DNA of 63,635 nucleotides, filler included, from Octopus bimaculoides (GCF_001194135.2; 7 parts of 7 records of this genome joined end to end with filler, not necessarily neighbours in it); one strand, 5' to 3'; positions 4,860 to 49,891 are shown, numbered from the whole stretch's first letter. Notes: a model not told the origin generated them from the letters alone. Made by a program: numbers and translations.

Positions 4860-5540
4860 ACTATAGACAGGATCGGACAATTGTCGTGCTGATGGCGCTT
4901 ATTGAATCAGGAACTTGTACCCACGACTGCCCTCTTATCTCCAGACAATAAACCTGTCTTTTTCCTTAATGGCATGACAACTTTGAAGAAGTCTTGATTC
5001 TTGAGGTGGAGATGATGTTAATAAAACAATAATTCGTGTTGTATAGTGTTTGATATACCTGTATTTGTCTACGTTGTTCAAATACATGCCACTGGCCCCT
5101 CTGAGATATTTCTCTCAGCATTTTTTTTTTTTGTTTAAATTGTGTAAATTACCGAGGTTATAAATGTGTTCTATTTCTTTTTATATACATCCAAGTCCAT
5201 TGGCTACTGGAGATAAGGTCAGGCAATTGTCGTGCTGATGGGGGCTTTTGAGTAAGAAACACATGTCCACGACTGCTCTCTTATCTCCAGACAGTAAGCC
5301 CGTCCTTTATCTTAATAACTTAATGGCTTGTCAACATCGAAAAATGCTTGATTCTTGAGATTATCTCCCCGTTTGATATGTAGCTGTTCCTGATTGTCAT
5401 TTGGTAATTATGATACAACCTCTAGAGGCAGAGACAATTTTAATAAATCAAGGATTTATGCTGTATGGTCTTTTTAATATACCTGCATTTGTCTATATAG
5501 ATAAACAGTCTGAGCCAGTTATATTCAAGTACATTGGTCA
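4860..5540 (+). ncRNA. Candidate duplicated structured ncRNA (H/ACA snoRNA-like or pre-miRNA-like), two copies
   Basis: Copy 2 has CTGGAGATAAG (5207-5217) pairing with CTTATCTCCAG (5280-5290), GTCGTG/CACGAC upper stem, ANANNA hinge, then a second hairpin. The same islands are conserved in copy 1 (4875-5085) while loops diverge. Confidence 0.35.
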
Positions 5541-39845: not shown

Positions 39846-42800
39846 TACATACATATATACATACATACATATGTTATTTTATACAAATGTATGTACGTAC
39901 CAAGAGCAAAAATCAGAGACCAAACAAAAATATCTCGTAGGTACATACACATACACACACACACGCATACACGCACACACATACACGCACACGCAAAGGG
40001 ATTCGTGTAGTTCTCAACGTACACATGTATAAGTGTGTCTGTGTTTGTGTTTCTGTGTGTATGTGCAAGCTGTGTGTGCGTATGTGTGTGCGCGCGTTCT
40101 TGGGCGTAACTTTCCCACTCGTCGAAAGTTTCTCTTTCTGCCTCTCTCTCTCTCTCTCTTTGTCTCTCTCTTTCTTTCTCTCACTCTGCCCCTCTCTCTC
40201 TCTCTTTGTCTCTCTCTTACCTCTGTCTTTCTTTCTCTNNNNNNNNNNNNNNNNNNNNNNNNNNNNNNNNNNNNNNNNNNNNTTAATTAATTAANNNNNN
40301 NNNNNNNNNNNNNNNNNNNNNNNNNNNNNNNNNNNNNNATATATATATATCGGGCGGCTTTTAAGTTAGCTCCTGTGGAGGGCTCTTCATTGGGCCTTGG
40401 ACCCAACAATGACACTTCATGCATTGAGTACATATTAAATTTTATTAAACTTGACCAATATTTTCCATGCAGTGAACAATTTTTATCAAAACAATGATAT
40501 AATTTGTCGACTTGCAACTTATTGCAAAGCTGCATGATAAACAACATTTTTTGTCTTCCCCTTTAGGGGTCAGTACAATTTTTTTTCTGTCTAACCTCTT
40601 TCTTTCTCTGTCTCTTTCTGTTGATTGTTTTCAACCATCACCATCACCAGTACCACCACCATCACCACCACAACTGCCATACACACACCTTTCAGTCTTC
40701 TGACGCCAACATCATTAATAGCTTTGACTTCGCCCCTTCTCCTCCACCACCATCACTACTGTCTTTTACATCTCTTACTATCACCGTCATCCCTGACTGA
40801 CCACCAGCACCATCATCACCATCTCCTCCGCCTCTATCACGACTGCAGCTCATACTATTACAATCACCCCATTACCATCACAACCGTCAATCTACTACCG
40901 TCTCTATGCCAACTATTACTCTCACCCCATCATGAGGAATAGTGGAAGTGTCATTGAATAGTGAGAGACGGGGTCAAAGTATGACACACTGACACACACA
41001 AATTCGTTTGGCATTTATTATTATAGATATATAACATACGTAGCTCATATAAATTCACCAAAAACAATGTGATTTATTATCAGCTCGATAAATTTTATTA
41101 TTATAATCGCCACCCAAATTGTTAATATAATTACATTTAATTTTCCAATACCGACTTAATCGTGAAAAAATCCATCTTATTAAAGCTTCTTATATATTTT
41201 TGGCTGTTAGCTGCAACCAGGTTAATTATCTTGATAGTGTTATAATTATTGACTGTGCAGAAAATTCAATTCAAAAATTCCAATGGAAGTAAAACGTATT
41301 CGAAGATATATAGTTCTACAATATTGGGTCACTAAAAGTTTAGATTGGCGCCAAGCTTTGATAACATTACTCTATCAAATGATTCCTCTTCTAAAAGCTG
41401 CGTAGTTTATCAGTGTCTTTGGACCCTACAGTTTCTCTTGTGGCTGGTATGTTGAATTCTCCAAGTGATAACGCATAATCATTCCAAGCGAGTTCTAACC
41501 TTCGTTAGTGACAGTAATACAAACATTTCATATAAAATAAGTAAAAATCATTGAAATGATTTATATCTAATTGGATTTAGCTGTGTAGTTCAGAAAATTA
41601 GACAGGATCGCTTTACAATGTTGTTTGTATGAATAGGTCCCTTACTGGCTGATACTATCAAAACAATGGAAATTTTCTCCTATGACTTTGATTATACAAC
41701 TTGTAATGTTAAGAATCGTGAAATATAATATTTTACATGCAGCACACGCTCAATTACACAGTTACGCATTCTCTTTCACCTTCTCCTGTTAACAATACAT
41801 CTCACTTTTAGTCAAATCTTGTTGAATACAATGTCAAACATGATGATTTATTTTTCCGCTACTGCTCATTTATCTTACAGTTACAAGGAAAGATATCAGC
41901 ATGTAATACAACACAATTAGTCAGAAGCTATACTTGGATTTTATAAAGTATGAAAACAGAAAAAAGACCATCATATATCATAAAATCATTTATGCTTCAG
42001 TTTGCGTGTGTATTTTATGTGATGTGTGTATTTTATGTGATGTGTGTGTATATGACTACTTTTTTTTATCAGTATTCTTCCGAGGAGGAGGGAGCTGATT
42101 TCCAATAAAAGAAACAAAGCACCATCTGTGGAATTTGGATAACAGCAGTGATAATTGTTATACATCAAACTCTGAGAAAGTCTTGTTTATTTTTACTGTT
42201 CCACTTACTGACTGTAATTGCAAAGTATAATCGGTCTCTTTCGTTGCTTGAAAATTCTAATGTAAGGTTTCTTTAATTATTTGAAGTCTTCTTGTAAAGA
42301 AGGAGTTGGTTTCTAACAAAGCTACAAAGGTTTATCATTGTAAAAAAGATGGCGAAAACGAACTTGAGAAAAGTCTTGCATATTTTTATTGTTCTGCTTA
42401 CAGATTGCGAACATCACGAGAAGTTAATATCATGCAGATTCTTTCGAACTGCTGTTGATGATCTGGGTGATACCTCCTACACTGGTACTGGTATGGCACA
42501 GTTGACACTTTCTATAAAAACGTGACGCTTTAAAGACATCGTTCTTATCTTTCTTGTTGGTGAGGTATTTAGTTGCTATCTCTCGTCCATGGGCGCAAAA
42601 AGCATACTTTCTAGATGAGGTGTATCATAGGAGAGGTTATTATTTCTGTCAATGTTGCTGGTATTCTCTAGCTTACAGGATATACACAACTTCTTGCTAT
42701 GATAAGTGTTTTGGAGGTTATTTCAGCTACCCTTAGTTAATGTGGAAAAAAACTGTAGATTTAGTGCACCTATTCAGAAGGACTTCATCTAATCTTATGA

Positions 42801-43795
42801 TGCTATTGTTTTTGTTGTTGAGTACACATGTAATGCATTCATTCTTGCCTTTACTGATATGAGAGCACTTAAAGGTCATCTAAACTGATCTTATGCCTCT
42901 GCTTCCATTTTTCTGTTTAACACAGATGTTGTCTGTGTCACTGTTGATGTGGAAGTTACCAGTAGTTGTTAGTAGCATTCTAGTCTTCATGTTCAAGATG
43001 CAGATCTTCTTTAATGTCCAGTCTAGTATCCCAAATGACATATGGTCATATTGAATGCAAGTGACTTTGACTTAAACATTATCTGAAATCTGCTCTGTAT
43101 GTACGTATATACGTGTTTGTGTGTGTGTGCGCGCGCACACGCGTGCGATGTGAATTCGTTGTGTGTAGGCATTCGTATGTGCGTGCATACTTGTGAACTA
43201 GGTCTCAGAGATGAAATGTTAATGAAAGAGCATCGTGACAACGAGATGGGCAATGAATGAAATATAGAATATAAACACCATGTTGATTATTATCATTATA
43301 CTGTGGTCAGATAACAATTGTTCAATAACAAATGCATGTGATGAAATAAATATACTGCAGCGACTAGTAATTTCTGTGGTATATAAAGACCACACATAGC
43401 TTTTATTTTACTTTAATGATTTTGCTTTCAAAAGTACTGAACGAATTAACAACTAATTAGCTCTATACGCAATGCAATTCACAGCAATCTTTCACTCCAA
43501 GGATTAAGAAACAAAGAATTGAAAGTGAAAGACGGCAATGTACAACAAACTTGGCTACTCCTGAGAAAGCGATGATATCGTAAATATTAGTAAATGCTTA
43601 AAAGTAGGTTATTAAACGTCATTATTATAGATTTCTGCTTTCATTTTTCAACAGTATCATTTAGTGAATGAGCTTTTCATGCATGCGTCTAGGTATTTGA
43701 TTGGACAGATGTATCATTCATAAGTTGACTAAATATTGTTGAGAGATAAAAACACAAATCTATAATAATGACGCTGAATAACTTACTTTTAAGCA

Positions 43796-44157
43796 TATAG
43801 GAAAGTTGGTTATACATCATTAGAGGTATACCTGACTTTCCTATATAAAATTATAGAAATATAACGGAACGCTGAACTCCAGACTATCAACTTAAACAAC
43901 ACTTTATTTAGGTGGTAAATATATACATCTTTAGTTCTTGTTGTTACAGCTTCTGTTGTGTGTGAGCATAGTTGTTGGGACGTGGGTATGTAGTTGCAAG
44001 CGAGCTGTCGAGTGTAAGTCCGAAAGATGTAGAGAGACAGCTTATCACGTCCATGCTCATGGTCGGCCGACCGTAAAAGAGATAGAATTAAGCGGGAACG
44101 CTTGCTTGTTTAATTCCACGCATGCGAGAGACTACGCATGCGCACGGCGTTACTACA
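43796..44157 (-). mobile_element. Solo LTR of a Gypsy-like LTR retrotransposon family (362 bp)
   Basis: Aligns end to end with the LTR at 47449-47885 apart from a roughly 75-bp deletion between two CACGTCCATGCTC direct repeats. Minus-strand start TGTAGTAAC; flanked by a perfect AGCA(T) target-site duplication (43792-43796 / 44158-44162). Confidence 0.85.
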
Positions 44158-45367
44158 AGCATTTACTTATTCGTTTCGCTTTCTTAGGATATTCGAGTTT
44201 ATTTTTGTACATGCCCAGCTTTCATGTCCAATCATGTACCTAAATTAAAAGAAAGATCGCCTAAATCACCAAGCCATGAAGTGTCGCACTAAATAGAAAG
44301 ATGTAGAAAGCTGTCCACTGGTCATGAGGGATAGACACTTCAAATGTTATAGTTCCAGTTTCTTTCTGTATTTCTTATTCTTTATTTTGTTACCATTTAT
44401 CAATGAGATAGATCTGTTATTAACAGTAGAATCGTGGACCAAAATTCCCAGTTGTATTTAATCACGCCACTTTACATTCCGAGTTCAAATCGCACGGAAG
44501 CTGCCTTTCTCTTGCATTCTTTTAGGATTGATAACATTAGTATCAGGAAAGTTGATCGGTAGAAATGGCAGAATCACGGATAAAATTCCTTGCAGCGTTA
44601 TGTAGCTTCACATTCTGAGTCCAAATCCCATCGAAGTTTTAATAAAAGTTCTTTTCTTCTTTATTTTTCAAAATGAAAGACTTTGACTTTCACCGTTGAA
44701 ACAAAATGGATCGTTTTTCTTGCCAATTGTCAGCCTTTTTAAGGAATTGCACTCCTCATATCAGTTAGGAAATCAGTAGTCAACGATCAACAGGGTCTAT
44801 GAGAATGGTATTCAGCTGGTACATAAATCTGGGGCGCGGGAATCCAAAGCAGAACCCGATTCAAAAAGAGTTTCCGTGGGTTTCTGACGAGAATGGACCC
44901 TACCTTCTTGCCAGTTGAGGCCCGAAAGTTACCTCTTTCTGCCGGGCAAATTTTCTCTCAGAGGATCTGATAGTCAACAGCTGAAACTATATTTATGAGT
45001 TAAATGTGAAATATCCTTAAATTTAATTTAAAGAATACGTTAGTTTTTATTACTCCCTTCCGGATCAATCGACTTAAAACATGCATGCATACCTGCATAA
45101 GTACAGATATTTCCCGATGAAACGTTTTGTACACATTTAAATTAATTAATGTTTATATATTAGTTAATTATACTAATAATGGCGTTTGTACATTTACAGC
45201 TGAAACAACTATAGAGATTAAAATGAAATTATGAAACATCTGTGAAATCTCCGCCTTTTCACTATTCTAAATATATACATACATATACATATACACACAC
45301 GTGTCCGTGTGTGCATCTGTGTCTGTGTGTGTGTATGCGCGTATGTGTGTGCGCGTGTGTATGTACG

Positions 45368-47885
45368 TATAGGAAAGTTGGTTATACATCATTAGATGTA
45401 TACCTGACTTTCCTATATAAAATTAAAAATTAAGCGGAACGCTGAACTCCAGACTATCAACTTAAACAATGTTTATTCAGGTGTTAAATATATACATCTT
45501 TTGCTCTTGTTTGTTGTTACAGCTTCTGTGTGTGTGAGCATAGTTGTTGGGACGTTGTTATGTAGATGTGAGCGAGCTGTCGAGTGTAAGTCCGAAAGAT
45601 GGAGAGTGACAGCTATACACGTAAAGAGACTGTNNNNNNNNNNNNNNNNNNNNNNNNNNNNNNNNNNNNNNNNNNNNNNNNNNNNNNNNNNNNNNNNNNN
45701 NNNNNNNNNNNNNNNNNNNNNNNNNNNNNNNNNNNNNNNNNNNNNNNNNNNNNNNNNNNNNNNNNNNNNNNNNNNNNNNNNNNNNNNNNNNNNNNNNNNN
45801 NNNNNNNNNNNNNNNNNNNNNNNNNNNNNNNNNNNNNNNNNNNNNNNNNNNNNNNNNNNNNNNNNNNNNNNNNNNNNNNNNNNNNNNNNNNNNNNNNNNN
45901 NNNNNNNNNNNNNNNNNNNNNNNNNNNNNNNNNNNNNNNNNNNNNNNNNNNNNNNNNNNNNNNNNNNNNNNNNNNNNNNNNNNNNNNNNNNNNNNNNNNN
46001 NNNNNNNNNNNNNNNNNNNNNNNNNNNNNNNNNNNNNNNNNNNNNNNNNNNNNNNNNNNNNNNNNNNNNNNNNNNNNNNNNNNNNNNNNNNNNNNNNNNN
46101 NNNNNNNNNNNNNNNNNNNNNNNNNNNNNNNNNNNNNNNNNNNNNNNNNNNNNNNNNNNNNNNNNNNNNNNNNNNNNNNNNNNNNNNNNNNNNNNNNNNN
46201 NNNNNNNNNNNNNNNNNNNNNNNNNNNNNNNNNNNNNNNNNNNNNNNNNNNNNNNNNNNNNNNNNNNNNNNNNNNNNNNNNNNNNNNNNNNNNNNNNNNN
46301 NNNNNNNNNNNNNNNNNNNNNNNNNNNNNNNNNNNNNNNNNCGTGGTCAGTTGTGACCGGTTACCTGGTACGGAATATTCAATGAAAGTTACACAAGGAA
46401 AATTTGGTCTGTTGATCGTGAGTGGAAACATCCACTCTAACAGAGTCGACAAAACCGAGTGTGTTGATATGGTGTGATCCTGGTGGTGGGGTTGTTGGCG
46501 CACGACATTGTGGTAGACAGTACATTGATGGTGAAGACGTCGGCGCAGGAACTGTAATATAGCTGTGTTCTATATGTGTGGTGGTAATTGTTGTCGTCGC
46601 GGTGGTAATCTTGGTTGAACGAAGCTGGTGGCGAAAAGGCTGTTTGGTGATGAGTGTTTGAAGAGGTGCCCTTTTTACAGACGGTCGACAGACAAATCTC
46701 TGGACGACCAATAGCGAAAACCTCGAAGAAAATTTTCTTAACCCAAGATGAAAGAACGACCGTGTGAACTCAAAAAAGGAGAAATGGTGACGAATGGAAA
46801 AACAGAGGACTCCTTTTATTTAAACGTGTCACACGGTCGAACACCAAAATATATATCAAAGATGATATACAAGTAATTATGTTATACTACGGTAACATAG
46901 ATTTCGTAAATACCAGTAATGAGACGATAGAAAAGACAACCGTATGAAATGAATAACAAGAGATATTTAGTGTGGCATAAAAGATGTATGTGTATGTGAG
47001 AGTGTGAATGCGACATATAAGAACATAATAAAAGACAGGCCGTCTATATGTATGTGAGATATCACAGCAGATAGAAAGTCAGNNNNNNNNNNNNNNNNNN
47101 NNNNNNNNNNNNNNNNNNNNNNNNNNNNNNNNNNNNNNNNNNNNNNNNNNNNNNNNNNNNNNNNNNNNNNNNNNNNNNNNNNNNNNNNNNNNNNNNNNNN
47201 NNNNNNNNNNNNNNNNNNNNNNNNNNNNNNNNNNNNNNNNNNNNNNNNNNNNNNNNNNNNNNNNNNNNNNNNNNNNNNNNNNNNNNCTCCATGGCCGCAT
47301 TTGTTCTTTAGTCGGGGTTCACCAGTTATAGGTTGGTAGTCCAGAGTCCATGCTGCGTTTGTTTCTTCGTCGGTGTCACCACTTTATAAGAAAGTGGGTT
47401 ATTGCAGCTCAGCGGGCTGCGTGTTCGAATCACGTCGGGGGTCACCAGTATAGGAAAGTTGGTTATACATCATTAGATGTATACCTGACTTTCCTATATA
47501 AAATTAAAGAATATAACGGTACGCTGAACTCCAGACTATCAACTTAAACAACATTTATTCAGGTAGTAAATATATACATCTTTAGCTCTTGTTTGTTGTT
47601 ACAGTCTCTGTGTGTGTGAGCATAGTTATTAGGACGTTGGTATGTAGATGTAAGCGAGCTGTCGAGTGTAAGTCCGAAAGATGGAGAGTGACAGCTAAAC
47701 ACGTCCATGCTCTATTGTTGGCCAGCAAGAAAGAGACTGTCTCCAGGTTGGAATGTTGAAGACACTGCTTGACACGTCCATGCTCATGGCCGGCCGACCG
47801 AGAAAGAGATAGAATAGAAACGGGAACGCTTGCTTGTTTAATTCCACGCATGCGTGAGACTACGCATGCGCACGGCGTTACTACA
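45368..47885 (-). mobile_element. Two-LTR, internally deleted (non-autonomous) Gypsy-like retrotransposon with tRNA-Trp PBS
   Basis: 5' LTR 47449-47885; 3' LTR 45368-45633 runs into an N gap; TSD TACG(T)/TACA(T) with one mismatch; PBS 47415-47447 abuts the 5' LTR. Internal 46341-47415 has no intact ORF, only a frameshifted GRPEI-SVDRL-KRAPL resembling the integrase C-terminal SIDRLK motif near 46660-46710, followed by Thr/Pro-rich sequence. True length is uncertain because of two gaps. Confidence 0.8.
47415..47447 (-). other. Extended primer-binding site complementary to the 3' half of tRNA-Trp including CCA
   Basis: Plus strand reads GGCTGCGTGTTCGAATCACGTCGGGGGTCACCA, matching the metazoan tRNA-Trp(CCA) 3' end as I recall it (GGCTGCGTGTTCGAATCACGTCGGGGTCA+CCA) with one extra G. 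It lies 1-2 nt from the LTR end. Confidence 0.85.
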
Positions 47886-48429
47886 TACATATATATATAT
47901 GCATACATACATTAAACTGAAGTTCAATTAAGAATTCCTCAAACAGATCATAGCGGGACTGAGCTTGTATGTAGAAATTGATATTGTGTTTAGTGTCATT
48001 TACAATCAATATCATATTCTAAATCGATGTCACAACGTCTTTATATAATGCATATGCACATCTACAAGCTGCTTTTTTCAATAACTTGAAAACAATTGTA
48101 AACTATTGATTTTTCACAATAAGGCTACAAATGTCGTGGGAGGATATTGTCGATTATATTGAATCTAGAACTTGTTTCATACATCTATCTTCGATCATCA
48201 CTGATTCATTCATCACTGATTCATTCATCACTGATACAGGTTAAACTGTGCCAAAATTTGAAACCAGTATTATTAAATATAGTAAGGCAGAATCGTAAGC
48301 ACGCCGGGCGAAGTGCTTAGCGGTATTTCGTCTGTCTTTATGTTCTGATTTCAAATTCTGCCGAGGTCGACTTTGCCTTTCATCCCTTTCGGGGTCGATA
48401 AATTAAGTACCAGTTGCGTACTGGGAGCG

Positions 48430-49160
48430 AGGATCTTTCTGATTTGACGGGCAACACTTTTCATTAATGTTTTATGTAGTGTTTTTGGTACCGAAACACT
48501 TTCAAACTTCGTATACTTGTATATTTTGTGTTATAGAACAGATAAAAATTTTTGTATTCGAAGTTATTTCATGTAAAAAATTGTCGTATTTCGGTAATTT
48601 CAACCAATCACTGACGTCTATTGAGGTAAAAACAATTACTACCGTGGAATGTAAACAACGGTGTCATGGGATCTTTTCCCTTGAATAAAATTAGTGCCGT
48701 TGTTTGTCAACAACAACTACCCGTGTTACTCTTATTTATGACATCGTTCGTGCGTTTGTACTGGTTTTAGCTTTAGGGTTAAGGTTCGGGTTCGGGTTTT
48801 AGAGTTAGGGTTAGTTTTAGGATTACGGTTAGGGTTATGATTATTTTTGCCATAACCTCACTCATAACCCTAACCCTAACCCTAAAACCCTATAACTCAT
48901 AACCATAACCCTAACCCTAACCCCAACCATAACCCTAAAACCCTAACCCTAACTCTAAAACTCGAACCCTAACCCTAAACCCTTACTAGGGAATAATGAT
49001 ATAATTAAACAGGGCATAACACTCTTGACAACGGTAAAAAATATTGTTTATAAAAACAGCACTAACTGTATTCAGCTGAATAGACGCCAGTGATTGGCTG
49101 AAATTACAGAAATACGACAACTTTAACATGAAATAACTTGCAATATATAAATTTTGCACT
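48430..49160. mobile_element. Foldback non-autonomous DNA element with an internal head-to-head degenerate telomere-like array
   Basis: 48558-48622 is the near-perfect reverse complement of about 49078-49140. The centre has (TTAGGG)n-like 48770-48840 followed by (CCCTAA)n-like 48855-48985. Confidence 0.75.
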
Positions 49161-49856
49161 CTGGGGCCGATGCAATCGATTAGCCCTCCTCACTCCCAAA
49201 TTTCAGATCTTGTACCTATAGTAGAAAGAAATATTACTACAGGTTCGAATTTCAGAAATGTCATCTGCTATCTGCTACAAATCACCTGTGATATCAATTT
49301 CATTTAATGATTTATCTGTTTCTGTGAAAACCGATTCATGTCGAAGAGTAACATCACATAAACACGGTATTGATATGGATGTACAGTAAAACTGAAGGAA
49401 TAAATAAAAAAAAACCCCAAATTTTTAATGGTTTAATCTGTTATATTTTTATTGGAAGGAATATTAATAAGATTTCATGATCACGTTCAGCATTAAATTT
49501 ATTGCATCGTTTTCCTTTTATCCAAATCCAGAACCAGAATTATTTCTTGTGTACGCATCCAGCGGGAAATGCCTTCAAATTTAAAATCTAGTAACGTTTC
49601 GACACTGATCCAGAGTCGTCTTGACTAGAAAGTAATGAATGGATTTTGAAACAAATCGAATCATGTTTAAATGACACAAAACCATTAAATTGATTTTAAA
49701 AGGTAATTCACAAAGACAACCTTTGAGGTTAAAATAGAATTGGAAAAGTTGGGGATTAGAAGAAAAATGCTTATTTTCAACATATGATTATATTGATAAA
49801 TACCTCACATAATTATACATACATACAAACATACATGCATACAAACAAACAAACAA

Positions 49857-49891
<35 letters not shown>

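What the first reader, a model, noticed from the sequence alone, without database searches (positions are those of the whole stretch)
47289..47466. Over-long tRNA-Trp PBS repeated as three tandem PBS-plus-LTR-end units
The PBS matches about 33 nt of tRNA-Trp (acceptor strand, whole T arm, into the variable region), well beyond the usual maximum of about 18 nt set by the m1A58 stop during plus-strand synthesis. Inside it lie two older degenerate copies of the same junction: GTCGGTGTCACCA followed by TATAAGAAAGTGGGTTAT (47369-47402; 16/18 match to the LTR end), and GTCGGGGTTCACCA followed by TATAGGTTGG (47311-47336), with a period of about 58-66 bp. This looks like iterative capture of tRNA plus LTR-end sequence in successive retrotransposition rounds, a chronologically ordered array of primer sites, and may reflect read-through of an under-modified tRNA. 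Long tRNA-derived PBSs in non-autonomous invertebrate LTR elements may already be described, so novelty needs checking.
Basis: partly seen in the sequence, partly recalled or inferred. Interest (0 to 1): 0.72.

Follow-up and report, generated by a model that had tools for sequence, protein, structure and literature searches.

The report
Over-long, repeated tRNA-Trp primer site

Summary
Window 47405-47447 (+ strand) matches 42 nt of genuine tRNA-Trp(CCA), from the anticodon loop through the added CCA: 39/42 plus one extra G, with a perfect 26-mer. One base later a ~437-bp repeat begins, which behaves as an LTR: a second copy is a solo insertion with a 4-bp target duplication. The element therefore lies on the minus strand, and this is its 5' LTR/PBS junction.

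Two further units (47340-47402, and 47287-47339, which is cut by an N gap) each hold a degenerate tRNA 3' part plus about 18 nt of the LTR end. Identity to the ideal junction falls from 92% to 69% to 57% away from the LTR.

The inner units are far more diverged than the LTR copies (6-10%), so the array predates insertion and is not a local duplication. However, units 2 and 3 share derived changes, so they are duplicates of each other and not separate captures.

The same architecture occurs in Ty3/gypsy elements in metagenome contigs, one of which carries the CsRn1-clade gag motif. A published Culex case is also similar.

Most likely cause: plus-strand read-through into a hypomodified primer tRNA, combined with template switching. 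Other copies from the source genome could not be fetched.

The parts
47405..47447 (-). Unit 1, tRNA part: the working PBS. It is complementary, on the minus strand, to tRNA-Trp from the anticodon loop to CCA (42 nt of tRNA).
   Evidence: tRNA linear 34-75, 39/42 plus 1 inserted G; perfect 26-mer at 47415-47440.
47448..47448 (-). 1-nt spacer between the LTR end and the PBS.
   Evidence: Direct reading. LTR boundary taken from solo copy A.
47449..47885 (-). LTR copy C, the presumed 5' LTR. In element sense it reads TGTAGTAACG...CCTATA, with AATAAA at 47559. It contains a 73-bp internal duplication.
47449..47498 (-). Hairpin at the U5 end of the LTR (23-nt arms), ending 1 nt before the PBS. Its PBS-proximal arm is the 18 nt that is copied in the inner units.
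   Evidence: I20-I22: present in all three LTR copies. MFE -33.6 kcal/mol, z -4.8.
47340..47402 (-). Unit 2: a degenerate tRNA-Trp 3' part (TCCAGA...CGTCGGTGTCACCA) plus an 18-nt LTR-end copy (16/18).
   Evidence: 69% to the ideal junction; 0/2000 shuffles.
47287..47339 (-). Unit 3: a more degenerate copy, cut on its left by the N gap.
   Evidence: 57%; 0/2000 shuffles; sister of unit 2.
46342..47082 (-). Internal region of the element between two N gaps. No coding capacity was detected.
   Evidence: no Pfam hit; no further units here.
45368..45633 (-). LTR copy B, cut by the N gap. It is either the 3' LTR of the same ~2.5-kb element or an independent solo LTR.
   Evidence: flanks TACG / TACA match 3/4, and both flanks are (ATAC)n-like. 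B-C identity is 91%.
43796..44157 (-). LTR copy A: a solo LTR inserted in one arm of an inverted repeat, with the 4-bp target-site duplication AGCA (43792-43795 and 44158-44161).
   Evidence: the empty site rebuilt from the other arm scores best when AGCA is removed.

Best explanation
**What it is.** The segment is the 5' LTR/primer-binding-site junction of an old LTR retrotransposon on the minus strand. The element is non-coding, either non-autonomous or decayed, and uses tRNA-Trp as primer.

**Shown.**
- The PBS next to the LTR is a DNA copy of 42 nt of mature tRNA-Trp, from U33 of the anticodon loop to the added CCA.
- Two inner units repeat [tRNA 3' part + CCA + ~18 nt of LTR end].
- Those inner units were already degenerate when this copy inserted.

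**Inferred mechanism.**
1. During plus-strand strong-stop synthesis, reverse transcriptase did not stop at position 58. This implies a primer tRNA lacking the m1A58 block, since A58 is copied faithfully. It copied the primer back to the anticodon loop.
2. An end-to-end template switch then placed a second U5-end + PBS behind the long copy. The acceptor was either a second primer tRNA carrying ~18 nt of nascent minus-strand DNA, or a minus strand that overran ~18 nt into U5.
3. The result is LTR - long tRNA copy - 18 nt of U5 end - older PBS.
4. This happened at least twice: once for unit 1, and once for the ancestor of units 2 and 3.
5. Units 2 and 3 then arose by duplication of an existing unit, probably copy-choice between repeats during reverse transcription.

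The array is most likely a tolerated by-product rather than an adaptation.
For: **Identity as a PBS**
- The reference is genuine tRNA-Trp genes.
- The match is 42 nt and includes CCA, which the genes do not encode.
- It lies 1 nt from the end of a repeat present three times.
- One of those copies is a clean insertion with a 4-bp TSD.

**Units**
- Alignment and shuffles.

**The array predates insertion**
- Unit divergence is 27-43%, against 6-10% between LTR copies.
- Unit 1 differs from the tRNA by about as much as the LTRs differ from each other.

**Two captures plus one duplication**
- Units 2 and 3 share 10 derived columns that unit 1 lacks.

**Generality**
- L035 and L102 are Ty3/gypsy elements, with RT, RNase H and integrase on the strand opposite the tRNA sense.
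- L035 has the CHCC gag motif of the CsRn1 clade (PMC2582038).
- In L035, 3-4 such units lie just inside the LTR boundary.
- L045, L056 and L061 also carry arrays.
- In L056 three 24-nt tRNA parts are perfect while the adjoining LTR-end parts differ by about 27%.

**Literature**
- Loss of the m1A58 and m5Um54 stops lets plus-strand DNA run further into the primer (PMC8599865).
- Culex cqgypsy_1 has tRNA copies with CCA, flanked by a 26-nt duplication of the LTR end (PMC3286476).
Against: - No other copy of this family from the source genome could be fetched, so it is unknown whether the array is a family trait or how unit number varies.
- The LTR ends TG...TA rather than TG...CA.
- The PPT and the 3' LTR junction lie in an N gap.
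- Copies B and C are not more alike than A and C, so the two-LTR structure is unproven.
- The template-switch step is inferred from anatomy only.
- The loci from other organisms were found with a 21-nt tRNA pattern, so they cannot say how common long PBSs are.
- In L035 the unit next to the LTR is not the best-preserved one.
Confidence: 0.6

Rival explanations
1. Strict iterative capture. Each of the three units is an independent fresh copy of tRNA plus LTR end, laid down in a separate retrotransposition round, with the outermost the youngest.
For: Identity falls monotonically from 92% to 69% to 57%. Unit 1 lacks the derived states of units 2 and 3. L056 has three perfect tRNA parts beside diverged LTR-end parts.
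Against: Units 2 and 3 agree with each other against the tRNA at 10 of the 13 columns where both differ. Their tRNA parts are 74% alike but only 66% and 54% like the tRNA. Independent captures should not share such changes, unless they are a systematic misreading signature.
Confidence: 0.15
2. Ordinary genomic tandem duplication (slippage or unequal crossing-over) at this locus after insertion, unrelated to reverse transcription.
For: Tandem repeats in the 5' UTRs of LTR elements are common (PMC3286476). The array abuts an assembly gap.
Against: The units differ by 27-43% while the LTR copies differ by 6-10%. Unit 1 is nearly tRNA-perfect, which a duplicate of unit 2 could not be. The same junction-straddling unit recurs in unrelated elements.
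Confidence: 0.05
3. The primer is a 3' tRNA half, cut in the anticodon loop, and not the whole tRNA. Reverse transcriptase runs off its 5' end at about U33 and is forced to jump templates, which sets both the length of the copy and the duplication.
For: The tRNA parts of units 1 and 2 begin at about U33 of the anticodon loop. The start of unit 3 is lost in the N gap. L065, L111 and L112 have copies ending at linear positions 37-40.
Against: L024 and L041 run back to linear position 26-27, just after G26, which is whole-tRNA behaviour. Other loci stop at 44-45 or 51-52, so there is no single end point. A 3' half would still carry m1A58. There is no direct evidence of such halves here.
Confidence: 0.12
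4. The extra units are kept by selection, for example as additional tRNA-binding sites for primer recruitment, or as decoys for 3' tRNA fragments that silence PBS-bearing transcripts.
For: In units 2 and 3 the last 14 nt (acceptor strand plus CCA) are 13/14 conserved while the T-loop part is scrambled. L056 keeps three perfect tRNA parts.
Against: No functional data exist. This copy is old and decayed. The same pattern would arise from occasional re-templating of the last 18 nt or fewer.
Confidence: 0.08

Closest known systems
CsRn1 clade of Ty3/gypsy LTR retrotransposons (CsRn1, PwRn1, AgCR; PMC2582038)
   Same: tRNA-Trp primer-binding site next to the 5' LTR, and a 4-bp target-site duplication. 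An element with the clade's CHCC gag motif (L035) shows the same PBS arrays.
   Different: The window element has no gag or pol, so clade membership cannot be tested. [quoted passage not shown] That text mentions no 42-nt copy and no repeated PBS/LTR-end units.
Culex quinquefasciatus cqgypsy_1 (Osvaldo lineage; PMC3286476)
   Same: tRNA copies bearing CCA sit immediately downstream of the 5' LTR and are flanked by a direct duplication of the LTR end (26 nt). This is the same layout: LTR end, tRNA copy, LTR end, PBS.
   Different: In Culex, two whole tRNAs (Lys and Glu) are present, in an element found as a single copy, and the authors read it as a Twin SINE insertion. Here the copies are partial tRNA-Trp, repeated three times, with graded decay.
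Retroviral plus-strand strong-stop termination at m1A58 (PMC8599865)
   Same: The PBS is re-copied from the primer tRNA. Without the m1A58 and m5Um54 stops, synthesis runs further into the tRNA.
   Different: In HIV-1 the read-through product is described as a dead end. Here read-through products appear to have been fixed in transposed copies.
Bipartite or extended tRNA contacts of Ty3, Gypsy and Ty1 (PMC1635307)
   Same: Complementarity to tRNA regions beyond the acceptor end, in the T and anticodon arms.
   Different: Those are separate short sites, some at the 3' end of the genome. They are not one contiguous copy of the tRNA, and they are not tandem.
Non-autonomous LTR elements (TRIM/LARD) and LTR elements with 5'-UTR tandem repeats (PMC6934838, PMC3286476)
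   Same: Short non-coding element with solo LTRs nearby and repeats between the LTRs.
   Different: The repeat unit here is the LTR/PBS junction itself. The bivalve TRIMs have no recognisable PBS.

Membership tests
LTR retrotransposon | PBS complementary to the 3' end of a tRNA, including CCA, within a few nt of the 5' LTR end | tested here: met
   42-nt match including CCA, 1 nt from the LTR end.
LTR retrotransposon | Insertion flanked by a short target-site duplication | tested here: met
   solo copy A has TSD AGCA, with the empty site rebuilt from the other arm of an inverted repeat.
LTR retrotransposon | Two direct LTRs bounding one element | tested here: inconclusive
   B and C have the same orientation, 2.08 kb apart, with flanks TACG/TACA (3/4). 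However, B is cut by a gap, and B-C identity (91%) is not higher than A-C (94%).
LTR retrotransposon | TG...CA LTR termini | tested here: not met
   the element-sense LTR is TGTAG...CCTATA (TG...TA). The terminal inverted repeat is imperfect.
LTR retrotransposon | Polypurine tract upstream of the 3' LTR | not testable with these tools
   The position falls in N gap 45634-46341.
LTR retrotransposon (autonomous) | gag/pol coding sequence | tested here: not met
   no ORF with a Pfam hit in the internal region. About 900 bp are hidden in gaps.
CsRn1 clade (Ty3/gypsy) | tRNA-Trp PBS and 4-bp TSD | tested here: met
   Criteria from PMC2582038.
CsRn1 clade (Ty3/gypsy) | Gag with the CX2HX9CX3C motif; RT phylogeny | not testable with these tools
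   No coding sequence in the window element. The motif is present in the analogous locus L035.
tRNA gene | Complete cloverleaf | tested here: not met
   ARAGORN finds none; no Rfam tRNA match. Only the 3' 42 nt are present, with encoded CCA.
tRNA-derived SINE | 5' tRNA-related head with A and B boxes, and a body ending in a tail | tested here: not met
   The tRNA 5' half (A box) is absent from the units. What follows CCA is the full LTR, with the same far boundary as solo copy A.

The most novel reading that the evidence does not exclude
Arrays of [LTR end + long tRNA copy] may be a recurrent, heritable scar of aberrant plus-strand transfer in tRNA-Trp-primed Ty3/gypsy elements of invertebrates. 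Each layer would record how far reverse transcriptase read into the primer, and therefore which tRNA modifications were absent or where the primer was cut. Use of inner sites could gradually move such units into the U5 end of the LTR. If so, genomes hold a readable fossil record of primer-tRNA modification state and of strand-transfer errors.
Probability: 0.3. Interest if true: 0.65.

Novelty: new variant of a known kind. Interest (0 to 1): 0.45.

Why it matters
Textbook reverse transcription copies exactly 18 nt of the primer tRNA, and read-through is regarded as lethal to the cDNA.

Here, and in about a dozen elements from other organisms, transposed copies carry 24-50 nt of tRNA-Trp. Several also carry stacked duplicates of the LTR-end/PBS junction.

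If this is general, three things follow:
- Read-through products can be rescued by template switching.
- There is a sequence-only way to infer the modification state of primer tRNA in germ lines.
- Tandem repeats at the start of LTR-element leaders, and possibly tRNA-like debris inside U5, gain a simple origin.

It also matters for annotation. LTR-finding tools that expect a single PBS of 18 nt or less may misplace LTR boundaries in such elements.

Tried and rejected
**Fetching other copies of the family**
- A spurious 108-aa ORF in the LTR was used as a handle for the protein collection. It gave no hits.
- The LTR hairpin 23-mer was searched in metagenome contigs. No hits.
- A conserved LTR 30-mer and the tRNA+CCA pattern were searched in viral contigs. 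No hits.
- Copy-number variation of the units in the source genome therefore could not be tested.

**More units elsewhere in the piece**
- nhmmer and blastn found none left of the gap.

**tRNA gene, or a known RNA family**
- None found. The miRNA-like Rfam hits are low-complexity or telomere-like repeats far below threshold.

**tRNA 5'-half remnant inside the LTR (47514-47535)**
- Only marginal: 3/500 shuffles in copy C and 31-34/500 in copies A and B. Nothing was built on it.

**Bivalve TRIM**
- That family has no recognisable PBS and nothing comparable is reported for it.

**Literature searches for long, extended or duplicated PBS**
- Nothing beyond cqgypsy_1 and the bipartite PBS of Gypsy/Ty3.

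**Not run**
- A second protein search with the 110-aa internal ORF was not run. The first handle search showed that non-coding ORFs of this genome are not in the collection.

Full report
**1. What is in the sequence**

The piece (40339-49891) has two N gaps, at 45634-46341 and 47083-47286. The finding starts at the first base after the second gap.

On the + strand, 47405-47447 reads CAGCTCAGCGGGCTGCGTGTTCGAATCACGTCGGGGGTCACCA. One base (G) follows. A repeat then starts at 47449 (TATAGGAAAGTTGG...) and occurs three times in the piece in the same orientation:
- A: 43796-44157
- B: 45368 up to the gap
- C: 47449-47885

Coordinates were refined.

**2. Is it tRNA-Trp?**

I did not rely on memory. 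The 21-mer GTTCRAATCACGTCGGGGTCA was scanned against metagenome contigs and hit 120 loci. ARAGORN called most of the 40 loci scanned as tRNA-Trp(CCA) genes. The aligned print-out of all 120 shows about 110 with the same tRNA-Trp sequence. These do not encode CCA, and most are followed by a T-run.

Against that gene sequence plus CCA, the window aligns from linear position 34 to 75 of 75. That spans the second C of the anticodon to the terminal A, at 39/42 with one extra G in the G-run. The stretch 47415-47440 is a perfect 26-mer. The three mismatches all lie in the 10 nt furthest from the LTR. The window has the C47/G57 isodecoder variant, which is present in many of the genuine genes.

Because CCA is added post-transcriptionally, this segment was copied from mature tRNA. 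There is no complete tRNA in the piece and no Rfam tRNA match.

**3. Is the adjoining repeat an LTR?**

Copy A sits inside one arm of an inverted repeat (arms 43591-43657 and 43733-43799). I used the other arm as a model of the uninterrupted sequence. The flanks of A join best when exactly AGCA is removed, and the match then continues well past the insertion point. A is therefore a clean insertion with a 4-bp target-site duplication, as expected of a solo LTR.

In the orientation that makes the tRNA segment a PBS (minus strand), the repeat reads TGTAGTAACG...CCTATA. It has an AATAAA at 47559. It ends 1 nt before TGGTGACCCCCGACG...

The last 50 nt of the LTR form a strong hairpin in all three copies. 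The MFE is -33.6 kcal/mol and z is -4.8. It resembles the U5 stems next to retroviral PBSs; that comparison rests on my own knowledge.

Copy B may be the 3' LTR of the same ~2.5-kb element. In favour, the flanks TACG/TACA match 3/4 and both flanks are (ATAC)n-like. Against, B is truncated by the gap and is not closer to C than A is (91% against 94%). This stays open.

The internal region that can be read has no coding capacity. The PPT position is in a gap.

**4. The three units**

I aligned each unit to a composite of tRNA (linear 26-75) plus the first 19 nt after CCA (the spacer G and 18 nt of the LTR):
- Unit 1 (47403-47466): 59 matches, 4 mismatches, 1 gap (92%)
- Unit 2 (47340-47402): 69%
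- Unit 3 (47287-47339, cut by the gap): 57%

No unit's score was reached in 2000 shuffles.

Unit 2 begins TCCAGA (anticodon loop) and carries remnants of the variable and T arms. After its CCA it has TATAAGAAAGTGGGTTAT, 16/18 to the LTR start. This 18 nt is the PBS-proximal arm of the U5 hairpin. No further units occur elsewhere in the piece.

**5. Age and relationships**

The LTR copies differ by 6-10%. Unit 1 differs from the tRNA by about 8-9%. It could therefore have been a perfect copy when this element inserted.

Units 2 and 3 differ from the ideal junction by 31% and 43%, and from each other by 27-31%. Both were therefore already old at insertion and must have been part of the transposing RNA.

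In the tRNA part, units 2 and 3 agree with each other against the tRNA in 10 columns. There are 5 and 2 private differences and 3 columns where all three differ. Examples are TCCATG(G) for TCAGAAGG, and TTTGTT... for GTGTTCGAAT. Unit 1 shares none of these changes.

The minimum history is:
1. One tRNA-templated event for the ancestor of units 2 and 3.
2. A duplication of that unit.
3. A later, separate tRNA-templated event for unit 1.

The tRNA copy starts at about U33 in units 1 and 2. Unit 3's start is hidden by the gap.

**6. The same thing elsewhere**

Of the 120 loci, 12 eukaryote-like ones are not tRNA genes. They are tRNA-Trp 3' parts with an encoded CCA, followed by AT-rich sequence. 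The tRNA-derived length is 24-50 nt. My query imposed a floor of 24 nt, so this shows existence and not frequency.

The 5' end points fall at linear positions 26-27 (L024, L041, just after G26), 37-41, 44-45 and 51-52.

L035 and L102 are Ty3/gypsy elements. Their RT, RNase H and integrase lie on the opposite strand, placing the tRNA segment at the 5' LTR. L035 also has the CX2HX9CX3C gag motif. Together with a tRNA-Trp PBS and a 4-bp TSD, that motif defines the CsRn1 clade (PMC2582038).

In L035, comparison with the 3' LTR puts the LTR boundary at 5205. Immediately inside lie three to four units of [tRNA part + CCA + 12-21 nt resembling the LTR start]. L045, L056 and L061 have similar arrays.

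In L056 three 24-nt tRNA parts are identical to the tRNA, while the LTR-end parts between them differ by roughly a quarter. This points to re-templating from tRNA, or to selection on those parts.

**7. Literature**

- Marsano et al. (PMC3286476) describe cqgypsy_1 of Culex. It has tRNA copies with CCA just downstream of the 5' LTR, flanked by a 26-nt direct duplication of the LTR end. The authors regarded it as a Twin SINE insertion. Its layout is the one seen here.
- Fukuda et al. (PMC8599865) show that m1A58 and m5Um54 act as stops for plus-strand strong-stop synthesis. They propose that read-through products are non-complementary after transfer.
- The Gypsy/Ty3 bipartite PBS (PMC1635307) is a different kind of extended tRNA contact.
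- Searches for long or duplicated PBSs found nothing else.

**8. Mechanism (inference)**

A contiguous 42-50-nt perfect or near-perfect tRNA copy can only arise by templating on the tRNA. That means plus-strand strong-stop synthesis passed position 58. A58 is copied correctly in unit 1, which fits an unmethylated A58.

The duplicated ~18 nt of U5 end lies behind the long copy. It is what would result if the extended plus strand, or the minus strand, switched end-to-end onto one of two molecules:
- a primer tRNA carrying a short nascent minus-strand DNA, or
- a minus strand that overran the PBS by ~18 nt.

The figure of ~18 nt is close to the polymerase-to-RNase H spacing of retroviral RTs (my own knowledge) and to the length of the hairpin arm. 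Either could set the break point. Copy-choice between existing units then changes unit number.

None of these steps was observed directly.

**9. Verdict**

It is wrong in detail, because the array is not one unit per round.

The feature is an uncommon variant of a known structure. It has one published analogue and several unpublished ones in metagenome contigs. Whether it is a family trait in the source genome remains untested.

Noticed in passing
window 43560-43799 and 44162-44200: A roughly 100-nt-arm inverted repeat (MITE-like or foldback) into which solo LTR A inserted. The arms still align across the insertion site.
   Followed up: partly
window 48545-49155: A large inverted repeat (arms 48577-48645 / 49056-49124) enclosing head-to-head degenerate telomere-type arrays, (TTAGGG)n at 48773-48837 and (CCCTAA)n at 48865-48983. 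This is an interstitial telomere-like palindrome.
   Followed up: no
window 47514-47535 (also 43862-43883 and 45432-45453): The LTR contains AACGGTA-CG-CTGAACTCCAGA in tRNA sense, which resembles the D-loop to anticodon loop of tRNA-Trp. It is marginal against shuffles (3/500 in copy C, 31-34/500 in A and B). It could be a relic of an older tRNA copy absorbed into U5, or chance.
   Followed up: partly
window 47687-47742 and 47760-47815: LTR copy C carries a 73-bp-spaced internal duplication that copy A lacks. This accounts for most of the 437 bp against 362 bp length difference.
   Followed up: no
L056 3025-3140; L045 4056-4240; L035 5079-5204; L061 1265-1316: Tandem arrays of [tRNA-Trp 3' part + CCA + 12-22 nt LTR-start-like sequence] in metagenome contigs of eukaryotic origin. 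In L056 the LTR-end parts alternate between two sequence types (GGAGG-like and GTGGG-like) that also distinguish related elements, hinting at template switching between co-packaged RNAs.
   Followed up: partly
L035 5205-5250; L045 4194-4239; L056 3139-3170: In this family the first ~45 nt of the LTR itself looks like [LTR-end ~17 nt + degenerate tRNA positions 44-65]. It is as if an old PBS unit had become part of U5. This was seen by eye only and was not scored.
   Followed up: no
L015 and L062 (positions given): tRNA-like sequences with a long variable arm share the tRNA-Trp T-arm/acceptor 21-mer, are not called by ARAGORN, and are followed by TGG rather than CCA. They may be SINE heads or pseudogenes.
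   Followed up: no
L024 1627-3339 (minus strand): A 571-aa ORF with a NADAR domain lies beside a 50-nt tRNA-Trp copy with CCA. The relation between the two is unknown.
   Followed up: no
window 42006-42047 and 48195-48235: Two short perfect tandem repeats: 18 bp x 2.3 and 15 bp x 2.7.
   Followed up: no
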